Below are positions 21,649 through 23,384 of a DNA stretch of 45,342 bases, in pieces. The stretch lies in the NCBI GenBank assembly GCA_003427395.1, contig BFEA01000012.1:5288614-5333955 (forward strand), given 5' to 3'. This DNA is from Chara braunii (lineage: Eukaryota > Plantae > Charophyceae). The notes beneath the pieces were generated by a model. It was not told the DNA's origin. It did not search any database and saw only the letters and a program-made list of their open reading frames with translations. Numbering within the stretch: position 1 is the stretch's first letter; each line of letters opens with the position of its first letter. A program made the translations under genes and the position numbers.

Positions 21649-22327
21649 GTTGACCTTCACCTACACCACTACGCTTCACCTTCACTAGCCAAAGTTCGTA
21701 AGGAAACTTTCACAAACAACTACACGCAGTTTGAACGGCAATAACAGCAGTGAGAGGGAGTTTCATCGAGGACATAACTGTCTGCTGATAATGTCCCTAT
21801 GGTAATCCACCATATCCTTTCGTCAACGCGAAAGGAAAGGAGATATCACCTACGGAAGCGCTTTCACGTTGAAAATGCCCGCCGCCAGACAGGCTTACCG
21901 GGACGAACCGGTAAGCAGCGCGGGGACCGAGCGTAGCCGCCAGCCGCAGCGCCCGTCGCCGGCCGACCCCCCCCCTCTTCTCTCAATTTCACCTCACACT
22001 ACCTACCTAGCACTACTAATTGTAGGCATATGGGGAACCCCGTAGCAGCCAGAACCGTGTTCCCGAGAGAACATGCGGGGGCTGCTCCCGACTTGCAGGT
22101 GGGCGATACCGGCTAGGGGACAGCCGGTAGCATCAGGGACCATGCCAACAGGATCAATCCCTTTGCCTCCCCTCAAGTCCCCTCCCCTACGAACATCAGC
22201 AGACTCTGCTCAATTCCGATCGGGGGATCCAGTGGTCTATCTCTAGGTGGCGGGCGCCAAGCATGCCCAGGAAGGTACATGAGGCGAATGGGGAGCCCCC
22301 GACCTCCTGAATGTCACTTGCGTGCGT

Positions 22328-22485
22328 TACCGTGCGTGGGATTACGACTGAACGCCTCTAAAGGGCAGATCCCACTAGCCCCTATTGTTCACTTCTGACC
22401 GTTGATGCTCGTTTTCGAGGGTGAAAAATGAATAATCCAGGGATCTGACCCAGTCAGAATCTGTGCTTGCAGCGACGGCGTATGC
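22328..22485 (+). other. Fragment derived from the 25S/28S rRNA 3' domain (H96-H97 region), interrupted by a 91-nt insert; not an rRNA gene
   Basis: taccgtgcgtgggattacgactgaacgcctctaa (22328-22361) plus gtcagaatctgtgcttgcagcgacg (from 22453) matches the plant LSU segment taccgtgcgctggattatgactgaacgcctctaa|gtcagaatccgggctagaagcgacg, recalled from memory. Confidence 0.85.
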
Positions 22486-22504
22486 CTCCTCTGATGACAC
22501 GAGA

Positions 22505-22723
22505 ATGCGGTGATCTCGGCGGTTTGCCGCGGGGGTGCTGTGAGAAGTTCATTGAACCTTATCATTTAGAGGAACAAGGGGCCTCGCTGCTCTGGACATG
22601 CACAACGGACAAAAATCATGGCGGTGTATCTTTCCATATTCTAGGCGAAGATTCCCTCTCGTTTTGCACATTTCGAGAGTAGTGCAGCGAGGCCCCAGCT
22701 CTCCGTAGGTGAACCTGCGGAAG
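22505..22723 (+). other. Fragment derived from the 18S rRNA 3' end (h44 lower stem and 3' strand, plus h45), with a deletion and a stem-closed insert; not an rRNA gene
   Basis: ggcggtttgccgc...tgtgagaagttcattgaaccttatcatttagaggaa, then tccgtaggtgaacctgcggaag at 22702-22723 (contains the universal ITS1 primer site). Confidence 0.9.
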
Positions 22724-23384
22724 TGGAAAAAAATAAAATAAAAATAAAAATAATTCTGAATTACCTAGGGCAGGTCAAGGCCGTCGCCCTTTTCAAAAAA
22801 AAAAAAGAAAGGATTTCTTGCTGCCGTGCGATCTCCCATCACCAATGGTCGTGCAGTGTCGCACTCCTGGTCGTGGTCCTGTTGCACGCTTATACCTTAC
22901 CCGCCTGCTAGTGGAGCCGTGCCCCTGCTGGCCCGCTGCTATTTTCGGAATGAATTGATGAATTGTTAAAGGAAAAAAACAAAAGAGCAAAAGGTCCAAC
23001 GGGCCGCAACTTTTTTTCCCCCGCCCGCGCCAAGAGCCGACCACAATTTTGCGGGAAGAGGAAGCCAACTTTTTTTTTTTTTTTTTTTTCTTACAGAGGA
23101 AGCCAACTTTGAATTCGAGTAGTTTCGAAGTTGGCATTGCGTGGACCCCTGCCGGGCAGACCATCTTCTTACCGTTGGGCGCCATTTGGACGTCTGTCGT
23201 ACTTGGAGCTATCGGCGTCGTCCCACCAGCGCAGCGCCATCCTTCGCCCTCACTCTGTGGTTCCAGCCTCTTCCTCCATAGCTGGCGACCGAACTGAGCG
23301 GGCAGCGGCAGCGACAGCAGGCAGCGCCGTCACGTAGGGGGAGCGGCTGGAGTCAAGGAGGACAGCAGAGCACGTGGGTGACCA

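What the first reader, a model, noticed from the sequence alone, without database searches (positions are those of the whole stretch)
22313..22755. Chimeric LSU+SSU rRNA-derived module at the 5' end of a LINE
Seen: within ~400 nt, a 25S/28S segment (22328-22485) is followed by an 18S 3'-end segment (22505-22723), which is the reverse of their rDNA order. Each piece is split by a ~90-120 nt foreign insert closed by a long stem, and an A-rich tail follows (22727-22753). The module sits ~0.7-1.1 kb upstream of the LINE ORF1 start, in the opposite orientation. Known: SINEs derived from 5S, 18S or 28S rRNA have been described, but I know of none joining both subunits' 3' helices with structured inserts. 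Inference: this is not ordinary rDNA debris. It could be (a) a LINE leader whose mRNA begins with long anti-rRNA segments, (b) a LINE-encoded antisense RNA mimicking ribosomal helices, or (c) a new rRNA-derived SINE inserted head-to-head with the LINE.
Basis: partly seen in the sequence, partly recalled or inferred. Interest (0 to 1): 0.9.

Follow-up and report, generated by a model that had tools for sequence, protein, structure and literature searches.

The report
Retroposed rRNA chimera interrupted by MITEs
This is a one-off, A-tailed retrocopy that joins a piece of large-subunit rRNA to the 3' end of 18S rRNA, later (or beforehand) hit by two common miniature transposons, lying next to an old SINE+LINE pair in the alga Chara braunii; it is ordinary retrotransposon by-product, not a new RNA module of the LINE.

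Summary
22332-22361 plus 22453-22500 is LSU rRNA (the H96-H98 region). 22506-22578 plus 22697-22723 is the 18S 3' region. An A-rich tail follows (22724-22753). All of it lies on the + strand, opposite to a decayed L1-like LINE.

The interpretation mostly does not hold.
- The two "structured inserts" are copies of two high-copy foldback (MITE-like) families. Other copies were found elsewhere in Chara braunii, and their flanks differ.
- The "hairpin-dense leader" between module and LINE (21975-22331) is a high-copy SINE on the LINE strand, with tRNA-like A and B boxes.
- None of 11 other LINE copies carries rRNA pieces upstream.
- The module's own LSU variant has about 2x single-copy depth, so it is not a SINE family.
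- No RNA reads cover the unique flanks.

Best reading: LINE reverse transcriptase copied a 3'-trimmed, A-tailed 18S fragment, switched template to LSU rRNA, and the cDNA joined at a microhomology (TACC) with the SINE head. This was either a separate insertion or the twin-primed arm of the SINE+LINE insertion. No target-site duplication was found.

Other notes of this scan report many U6, U2 and rRNA retrocopies in this genome. The kind is known (L1 chimeric retrocopies). Interest is low to moderate.

The parts
14714..14738 (-). A-rich 3' tail of the LINE (reads as a T-run on the + strand)
   Evidence: Sequence. LINE copies in L086 and L087 end the same way, with A22-A30 tails after a homologous 3' UTR.
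14739..21965 (-). Decayed L1-like LINE. ORF1 is 20770-21660, APE endonuclease about 18751-19215, RT about 17224-17916. ORF2 is broken into at least 5 frames. The 5' UTR ends near 21965.
   Evidence: ORFs. Pfam Exo_endo_phos_2 and RVT_1, weak. ORF1 homologues are all from Chara braunii, and one is named as DUF4283-containing. Collinear with 11 other copies at 62-72% DNA identity. 5' UTR core aligned.
21966..21974 (-). G9 run (C9 on the + strand) between the SINE 3' end and the LINE 5' UTR, where other loci have an A-rich SINE tail
   Evidence: Compare L095 (35-nt A-rich tail), L088 (A19) and L094 (A5) at the same junction.
21975..22331 (-). Copy of a high-copy SINE with tRNA-like A and B boxes. 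It has the same orientation as the LINE, lacks its first 10-14 nt, and has no A tail.
   Evidence: 87-92% identical to L094:5239-5612 and L095:4710-5171; also matches L088:5252-5492 and L085:9426-9544. DNA word depth is 85,000-211,000 against about 11 in the flanks. ARAGORN and Rfam do not call a tRNA.
22332..22361 (+). LSU rRNA piece, left half (H96/H97, up to ...CTCTAA)
   Evidence: 31 nt at 90% to LSU in L058/L063; 14-15 nt exact to LSU of 6 more rDNA loci, about 3.6 kb after their 18S ends.
22362..22452 (.). Insert 1: a 91-nt foldback (MITE-like) element in the H97 loop. Every LSU base is kept once, and the insert is flanked by A/A.
   Evidence: Homologous over its whole length (70%) to L087:4289-4384, with a shared inverted terminal repeat. 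Depth is about 36,000. RNA contigs of another copy have different flanks, TTA on both sides. Stem shown. The joint 22360->22452 in DNA and RNA is LSU without the insert.
22453..22500 (+). LSU rRNA piece, right half (GTCAGAATC... into H98)
   Evidence: Real LSU reads match up to 22500 and then run on into other sequence (128 reads, agreement 1.0). The only difference listed in this piece (table cut) is 22492 T for G. Alignment to L058.
22501..22505 (+). 5-nt filler at the LSU-to-SSU junction
   Evidence: Real LSU reads end at 22500 and real 18S reads begin at 22506.
22506..22578 (+). 18S piece, left half (distal h44/V9 to ...TTTAGAGGAA, then CAAG). 13 nt of 18S are missing between 22574 and 22575.
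   Evidence: 18S loose ends before 22506 and behind 22574 give the organism's own 18S continuation.
22579..22696 (.). Insert 2: a foldback (MITE-like) element of about 118 nt with a 13-bp terminal stem, flanked by AG/AG
   Evidence: Copies at L087:9363-9485 and 9488-9598, L091:5362-5470 and 5210-5345, L094:15106-15237, and L095:3493-3606 and 3695-3803. Depth is about 220,000. 349 contigs diverge without consensus right after 22695. Other copies have 2-3-bp flanking duplications (TT, TT, GT, ATA, ATA).
22697..22723 (+). 18S piece, right half (AGCTCT corresponds to AGGTTT, then h45 up to ...GCGGAAG). It stops 6-8 nt short of the mature 3' end, and no ITS1 follows.
   Evidence: 25/27 identical to L078 18S. 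22702-22723 exact in 84 loci.
22724..22753 (+). TGG plus an A-rich tail (A runs broken by single T)
   Evidence: Depth falls to single-copy level right after it.

Best explanation
The module is a low-copy processed pseudogene made by a LINE reverse transcriptase from ribosomal RNA fragments.

Inferred pathway:
1. Priming was on an oligo/poly(A) tail carried by an 18S fragment trimmed 6-8 nt from its 3' end.
2. After about 150 nt of 18S the enzyme switched template to LSU rRNA, entering in H98 and running back through H97. This left 5 filler bases at the junction.
3. The cDNA end was joined to DNA carrying the head of a SINE at a short homology (TACC, with 14/23 matching bases around it).

The SINE and the LINE behind it lie on the other strand, so the retrocopy sits head-to-head with them. 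This arose in one of two ways, which remain undecided. Either it was a separate insertion into an A-tail-rich hot spot, or it was the twin-primed, inverted arm of the same event that laid down SINE+LINE.

The two stem-closed inserts are copies of two abundant miniature foldback transposons that inserted at the DNA level (the rRNA sequence is continuous across them, and tiny duplications flank them). Two hits in about 170 nt of rRNA sequence is very unlikely by chance. I therefore suspect that they were already present in transposon-damaged rDNA units whose faulty, polyadenylated transcripts served as templates.

Nothing indicates that the module functions as an RNA.

Shown: the identity and limits of every piece, the copy numbers, and absence from other LINE copies. 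Inferred: the order of events and the template-switch mechanism.
For: - rRNA identity and exact limits.
- The 18S piece ends inside mature 18S, with an A-rich tail and no ITS1.
- LSU and SSU pieces are in the same orientation, with a 5-nt filler between them.
- About 98-99% identity to the organism's own rRNA: one listed substitution in 48 nt of LSU and one listed indel in 69 nt of 18S.
- The window's LSU variant has depth about 25, against about 11 for single-copy flanks and 51,562 for rDNA.
- Inserts are repeat families with inverted termini, other genomic copies and unrelated flanks.
- 21975-22331 is a SINE.
- Microhomology at 22331|22332.
- None of 11 other LINE copies has the module.
- L085 shows a T-run plus an inverted 36-nt LINE 3' end directly before its LINE 5' part, so twin priming may occur in this LINE family.
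- U6 and U2 copies are frequent near LINEs. Other notes of this scan list many A-tailed U6, U2 and 18S retrocopies in this genome (unchecked).
- Mammalian L1 forms 5' chimeras with 28S, 5S, tRNA and Alu. Antisense partners there are attributed to twin priming (bioRxiv 10.1101/2025.02.02.635956, read). Double template jumps are described in PMC2104539 (abstract).
Against: - No target-site duplication could be found, either around the module alone or around module+SINE+LINE.
- The LSU template was entered at an internal position, not at a natural RNA 3' end.
- The two transposon hits inside about 170 nt of rRNA-derived DNA are not explained by random insertion. The proposed source (transposon-bearing rDNA units) was not observed.
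- Junction-spanning long reads were not available. Logan contigs in the repeat-rich 22004-22819 are short, and none listed spans it.
- Copies whose LSU piece carries the rDNA letter at 22492 would be hidden under the rDNA depth.
Confidence: 0.72

Rival explanations
1. One event rather than two. During insertion of the LINE, the first cDNA ran off the LINE RNA 5' end (G9 of untemplated bases), jumped to a SINE RNA and stopped 10-14 nt from its 5' end. Meanwhile the second DNA end, which was T-rich, primed on the A tail of an 18S fragment and then on LSU rRNA. The two cDNA ends paired at the TACC homology. This is twin priming with foreign templates.
For: - On the LINE strand the order is T-rich run, antisense 18S, antisense LSU, SINE lacking its head, G9, LINE.
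- The SINE has no A tail here, although it has one in L095 and L088.
- No remnant of the SINE head lies beyond the module.
- Homology at the inversion junction.
- L085 has a T-run plus an inverted LINE 3' end before its LINE.
- Antisense tRNA and 5S partners of L1 are read this way in the paper.
Against: - No TSD flanks 14714...22753.
- SINE-before-LINE is recurrent (7 of 12 loci), mostly with an A tail between them. That fits LINE insertion into pre-existing SINE tails.
- The rRNA pieces look less decayed (about 1.4%) than the broken LINE, though the numbers are too small to decide.
Confidence: 0.3
2. DNA-level rDNA debris. A stray piece of a tandem rDNA array was moved here, in which a deletion from LSU H98 across the spacer to the distal h44 of the next 18S joined the two pieces. 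The A-rich run is unrelated.
For: - LSU followed by 18S is the natural order across the intergenic spacer.
- Transposon insertions and a 13-nt deletion are typical of dead rDNA units.
- Metagenome loci L058 and L063 show that rDNA with large internal deletions exists.
Against: - The 18S stops 6-8 nt before its mature end and runs straight into an A-rich tail. No ITS1 follows, and no spacer sequence is present.
- The left end joins a SINE at a microhomology, as at retrocopy 5' junctions.
- The locus is single-copy flanked and far from any rDNA in the window.
Confidence: 0.1
3. A functional or mobile rRNA-derived module: a new SINE family, or a LINE leader/antisense RNA that mimics or pairs with ribosomal helices.
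For: - The + strand folds better than shuffles (z = -4.2).
- The conserved rRNA stretches are nearly intact.
- Other notes of this scan report rRNA pieces inside repeats elsewhere in this genome (unchecked).
Against: - The fold signal comes from the transposon inverted repeats.
- Low copy number.
- Absent from 11 other LINE copies and from about 250 kb of other Chara DNA.
- No Pol III boxes or Rfam match in the module.
- No RNA on the unique flanks, and only 27 of 1458 laid reads are near-identical.
- The decoding-site segment is deleted.
Confidence: 0.05
4. Assembly artefact that stitched rDNA reads and repeat reads together.
For: - The whole of 21975-22747 is made of very high-copy sequence.
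- The assembly has N gaps.
- No listed contig spans 22004-22819.
Against: - rRNA and the inserts share no sequence through which an assembler could join them.
- The junctions have biological hallmarks: exact LSU continuity, AG/AG flanks, TACC homology.
- The window-specific T at 22492 is present in the DNA run at about 2x single-copy depth.
Confidence: 0.04

Closest known systems
L1-type chimeric retrocopies (U6/L1, 5S/L1, 28S/L1, tRNA/L1, Alu/L1), made by template switching or twin priming
   Same: Fragments of abundant structural RNAs fused directly to each other and placed at the 5' side of a LINE. An A tail is present, and the junctions have few extra bases or microhomology. Antisense partners are known and are attributed to twin priming (paper read).
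   Different: Here two rRNA species are fused to each other (LSU to SSU), and a SINE lies between them and the LINE. No TSD was found. The host is a charophyte alga. Single-event origin is not shown.
Tripartite chimeric pseudogenes of Magnaporthe grisea (Mg-SINE / WEIRD / MGL LINE), PMC2104539
   Same: Several cellular or retroelement RNAs joined in one cDNA by repeated template jumps of a LINE RT, including a SINE and a LINE part (abstract).
   Different: Those parts all share one orientation. Here the rRNA arm is inverted relative to SINE+LINE.
rRNA-derived SINEs (5S-derived SINE3; 28S-derived SINE28), from my own knowledge and mentioned in the paper
   Same: rRNA-derived sequence carrying an A-rich tail, mobilised by LINE machinery.
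   Different: Those are multi-copy families with a promoter. This unit is present once or twice and shows no promoter.
Transposons resident in rRNA genes (Pokey in Daphnia 28S; R1/R2 in insects), from my own knowledge
   Same: Clean transposon insertions at conserved rRNA sites. Insert 1 sits at the TAA of the H97 loop.
   Different: It is not shown that the inserts occupy real rDNA units in Chara. Both families are dispersed genome-wide rather than rDNA-specific.
Tourist/Stowaway-like MITEs
   Same: About 90-120 nt, inverted termini, thousands of copies, unrelated flanks, 2-3-bp flanking duplications, present in transcripts on both strands.
   Different: The superfamily is not assigned. The duplications are short and variable, and no autonomous partner was identified.

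Membership tests
LINE-mediated processed pseudogene / chimeric retrocopy | Copy of mature cellular RNA without its genomic flanks | tested here: met
   The 18S piece ends inside mature 18S with no ITS1. The LSU piece is internal and has no spacer.
LINE-mediated processed pseudogene / chimeric retrocopy | A-rich tail at the 3' end | tested here: met
   22724-22753. Depth drops to single-copy level right after it.
LINE-mediated processed pseudogene / chimeric retrocopy | Target-site duplication flanking the insertion | tested here: not met
   Local alignments of the flanks score no better than shuffles, both for the module alone and for module+SINE+LINE.
LINE-mediated processed pseudogene / chimeric retrocopy | Partners fused in the same orientation, with a direct junction or a few extra bases | tested here: met
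   LSU ends at 22500 and 18S starts at 22506, both in + sense.
LINE-mediated processed pseudogene / chimeric retrocopy | Microhomology at the 5' junction | tested here: met
   TACC is shared by the SINE head (reverse complement) and LSU at 22328-22331, with 14/23 matches further left.
SINE family (the module as a whole) | Many dispersed copies sharing the same junctions | tested here: not met
   The window's own letter at 22492 has depth about 25, against 11 for single-copy flanks. No copy in the window or in about 250 kb of other Chara loci. A whole-genome count was not possible.
SINE family (the module as a whole) | Internal Pol III promoter or a recognisable small-RNA head | tested here: not met
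   No Rfam match at E<=10 other than chance hits, and no tRNA.
Component of this LINE (5' UTR or leader) | Present at the same place in other copies of the LINE | tested here: not met
   None of 11 copies has it (L085-L095). These copies are only 62-72% identical to the window's LINE, and closer copies could not be fetched.
MITE (inserts 1 and 2) | Short, non-coding, with terminal inverted repeats | tested here: met
MITE (inserts 1 and 2) | High copy number with unrelated flanks | tested here: met
   Depth is about 36,000 and about 220,000. 349 contigs diverge after 22695. There are 7 other copies of insert 2 and 1 of insert 1 in fetched loci.
MITE (inserts 1 and 2) | Target-site duplication of fixed length | tested here: inconclusive
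   Insert 2 copies are flanked by TT, TT, GT, ATA, ATA, and by AG in the window. Insert 1 has A/A here and TTA/TTA in an RNA-contig copy. The lengths are ambiguous.
tRNA-derived SINE (21975-22331) | tRNA-related head with A and B boxes | tested here: inconclusive
   Box-like motifs (…CTCAGTTGGTAAGG…, …GGGTTCAATCCCC…) are read directly in L088, L094 and L095. ARAGORN and the Rfam tRNA model give no hit.
tRNA-derived SINE (21975-22331) | A-rich tail and high copy number | tested here: met
   A19 in L088 and a 35-nt A-rich tail in L095. Depth 85,000-211,000. The window's own copy has no A tail.
Twin-primed (5'-inverted) LINE insertion | Inverted arm on the 5' side, its T-run distal, joined by microhomology, with a TSD around the whole | tested here: inconclusive
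   The arrangement and the microhomology are met. The TSD is not found. The inverted arm is rRNA, not LINE sequence.

The most novel reading that the evidence does not exclude
The whole 8-kb block (T-rich run, antisense 18S, antisense LSU, headless SINE, G9, LINE) is one twin-primed insertion. In this reading the second primer used polyadenylated fragments of transposon-damaged rRNA. It would be a snapshot showing that Chara rDNA units carrying miniature transposons in LSU H97 and at the 18S h44/h45 junction are transcribed, tagged with A tails for decay, and captured by LINE machinery.
Probability: 0.2. Interest if true: 0.45.

Novelty: new member of a known kind. Interest (0 to 1): 0.25.

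Why it matters
As a single locus it matters little. It removes a candidate 'ribosome-mimicking LINE module' from the list and shows how such look-alikes arise: retrocopy, plus MITE insertions, plus a neighbouring SINE.

Its wider value is as one more data point that Chara braunii's LINE machinery retroposes structural RNAs (U6, U2, rRNA) and builds mosaics. This was known mainly from mammals and one fungus.

Two points could be tested genome-wide:
1. Whether transposon-interrupted rDNA units exist and feed such retrocopies.
2. Why this SINE sits directly in front of most copies of this LINE family.

Tried and rejected
- Rfam on the whole window (gathering scores) and on 21900-23200 at E<=10 gave only chance hits. 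The rRNA pieces are too short for the rRNA models.
- ARAGORN on the window and on 8 loci found nothing.
- A self-search of the window for further copies of 21900-22800 found none.
- The search of earlier findings by sequence was blank.
- TSD searches around three candidate boundaries all scored at shuffle level. A tempting 13-nt match (TTCT.AATT..ACCT) did not survive scoring.
- I first placed the LINE 5' end at 21996, then at 22017, and read the SINE as abutting it. L094 and L095 showed that 21975-22017 is the SINE's own 3' end, and that the 'boundary' at 22017 is only a 3-nt indel against the family. That reading is rejected.
- I also first thought insert-2 copies were confined to LINE 5' flanks. 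The 98-kb locus L094 has one far from a LINE 5' end, so that association is weak.
- An apparent 18S-like flank next to the L094 copy of insert 2 is 10/18 matches, which is chance level.
- A covariation test is impossible with one copy.
- The organism's own complete rDNA could not be fetched. Plant-like and alga-like rDNA from metagenomes, plus the organism's rRNA reads, were used instead.
- No spliced model was used.
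Full report
**Source and setting**

The window is eukaryotic. It has N gaps, microsatellites and no Rfam gene at gathering score. The ORF1 of the LINE next to the finding has its only relatives in Chara braunii proteins (16 hits, 40-71% identity; assembly GCA_003427395.1). 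The window is therefore from that alga.

The LINE lies on the minus strand:
- ORF1 at 20770-21660.
- Weak Pfam hits to the APE endonuclease and RT domains, in several broken frames.
- An A-rich tail at 14714-14738, after a 3' UTR shared with other copies.

**Check of the observation**

18S pieces:
- A pattern built from the two 18S-like stretches found 84 real rDNA loci in metagenomes. In every one the two stretches are 21 nt apart. In the window they are 127 nt apart.
- 22542-22574 is identical to 18S of L078, and 22702-22723 is identical to all loci.

LSU pieces:
- The LSU-like stretch matches LSU H96-H97 of L058/L063. Its core also matches six further loci, about 3.6 kb downstream of their 18S ends.

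Limits from the organism's own reads:
- Real LSU reads follow the window from 22453 to 22500 and then run on elsewhere (128 reads, full agreement).
- Real 18S reads enter at 22506 and leave at 22574 into the canonical 21 nt.
- A joint 22360->22452 is LSU without the 91-nt insert.
- The stranded RNA run puts first mates almost only on the minus strand in the rRNA-only bin, as expected for + sense rRNA.

Identity to the organism's rRNA is high. In the rows shown (the table is cut), there is one substitution in the 48-nt LSU piece and one indel in the 69-nt 18S piece.

A pairwise alignment refines the 18S break. CAAG on the left and AGCTCT on the right are the 18S bases ...CAAG|GTTT... with two changes. 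Insert 2 is therefore a near-clean insertion flanked by AG/AG, and a separate 13-nt deletion removed part of the h44 3' strand. Across insert 1 every LSU base is present once.

**What the inserts are**

DNA word depth is about 10-12 in the flanks (20300-21931 and 22748-23350). It is 35,000-230,000 across 21932-22747. Real rDNA accounts for about 51,600 of this, measured at 22492. The rest is dispersed repeats: about 10,000 distinct contigs, mostly 88-99% alike.

Insert 2:
- Seven other copies occur in fetched Chara loci (L087 x2, L091 x2, L094, L095 x2).
- They share the inverted termini and carry 2-3-bp flanking duplications.
- 349 contigs diverge without any consensus right after 22695.

Insert 1:
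- It is homologous over its length to L087:4289-4384, with the same inverted termini.
- RNA contigs show another copy with unrelated flanks, TTA on both sides.

The better-than-shuffle fold of the module comes from these inverted repeats. Both inserts are members of miniature foldback transposon families, not bespoke structural domains.

**What lies between module and LINE**

21975-22331, on the LINE strand, is a copy of a high-copy SINE.
- Fuller copies with an A-rich tail are at L095:4698-5172 (full length) and L088:5236-5650 (a variant with a different 3' part). L094 holds two tandem copies, the second followed by only A5.
- The head has tRNA-like A and B boxes that can be read directly. 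ARAGORN and Rfam do not call a tRNA.
- The window's copy lacks the first 10-14 nt and has no A tail. A G9 run separates it from the LINE 5' UTR.
- The module abuts the truncated SINE head at 22331|22332. There the reverse-complemented SINE and LSU share TACC and 14 of 23 bases.

- Eleven other copies of this LINE family were fetched with 6-10 kb of flank. None has LSU or 18S pieces upstream. These copies are only 62-72% identical; closer ones are not annotated and could not be fetched.
- The window-specific T at 22492 has depth about 25, so the module is present once or twice.
- RNA depth is zero on both unique flanks in the oligo-dT run. Only 27 of 1458 laid reads are 99% or more alike, so there is no sign of a LINE transcript running through the module on either strand.

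A LINE leader, a LINE-encoded antisense RNA and a SINE family are therefore all unsupported.

**Mechanism**

Four features are the hallmarks of LINE-mediated retroposition with a template switch:
1. An 18S 3' end trimmed by 6-8 nt and followed by an A-rich tail.
2. Same-sense fusion to an internal LSU fragment, with 5 filler bases.
3. No spacer sequence.
4. A microhomology at the 5' junction.

The missing hallmark is a target-site duplication, which I could not find.

Two routes to the head-to-head arrangement remain open:
- A separate insertion into a spot where several short A-tailed pieces are stacked (22754-22993).
- The twin-primed arm of the SINE+LINE insertion. In favour of this: the SINE lacks its A tail and its head, no head remnant lies beyond the module, and L085 shows a T-run plus an inverted 36-nt LINE 3' end directly before its LINE.

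Mammalian L1 makes comparable 5' chimeras with 28S, 5S, tRNA and Alu. Antisense partners there are explained by twin priming (paper read). Double template jumps are described for a fungal LINE (PMC2104539; abstract).

Two transposon hits in about 170 nt of rRNA-derived DNA are improbable for random insertion. I suggest, without direct evidence, that the templates came from rDNA units already carrying these elements.

**Context**

Three U6 copies and one U2 copy lie in the 128 kb around eight LINE copies. Other first-stage notes on this genome list many A-tailed U6, U2 and 18S retrocopies, and rRNA pieces inside repeats. These notes are unchecked and were used only as leads.

**Verdict**

This is a real, correctly described structure of an ordinary kind: a chimeric rRNA retro-pseudogene interrupted by two MITE-like elements, next to a SINE and a dead LINE. 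It is a new member of a known kind. Interest is low to moderate.

Noticed in passing
window 21966-22331; L094:4889-5612; L095:4698-5205; L088:5236-5650; L085:9426-9544; L091:5646-5679; L089:5164-5520: The same high-copy SINE sits directly upstream of the 5' UTR in 7 of 12 LINE copies of this family. It is mostly in the LINE's orientation. An A-rich tail (L095, L088), A5 (L094) or G9 (window) lies between them, and the SINE is tandemly doubled in L094. The SINE parts are 84-92% alike in the closest copies (L094, L095) while the LINE ORFs are about 68% alike. This suggests LINE insertion into SINE tails or recurrent 5' template switching.
   Followed up: partly
L085:9597-9686 (LINE strand): A T-rich run of about 44 nt, followed by the inverted last 36 nt of a LINE 3' UTR, lies directly before a slightly 5'-truncated LINE. 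This looks like a twin-priming signature.
   Followed up: partly
L087:5866-5966; L085:2498-2595 and 2810-2903; L088:10154-10250: Three U6 copies and one truncated U2 copy lie within the 128 kb around eight LINE copies. This is in line with the many snRNA retrocopies noted elsewhere in this genome.
   Followed up: no
L058:300-1900 and L063 (metagenome contigs, plant-like rDNA): This rDNA has large internal LSU deletions. The order is 18S 3' end, ITS1, 5.8S, ITS2, a short LSU 5' piece, then the LSU 3' domain, only about 1.1 kb after the 18S end. It could be a pseudogene or an assembly artefact.
   Followed up: no
window 22754-22993: Two further short pieces on the + strand each end in an A run: 22754-22806, with a GC hairpin plus TTTT before A13, and about 22807-22993. 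They look like stacked small retro-insertions right after the module's tail.
   Followed up: no
L087:9363-9598; L091:5210-5470; L095:3493-3803: The insert-2 foldback element often occurs as two adjacent copies. In L087 the pair is followed by a T22 run just before the LINE 5' UTR.
   Followed up: no
window 22407-22414 (insert 1), from reads: One subfamily of insert 1 carries four linked differences. It is rare in DNA (depth about 700) but abundant in three RNA data sets, with flanks TTA|...|TTA. This is probably a copy inside a highly expressed transcript.
   Followed up: no
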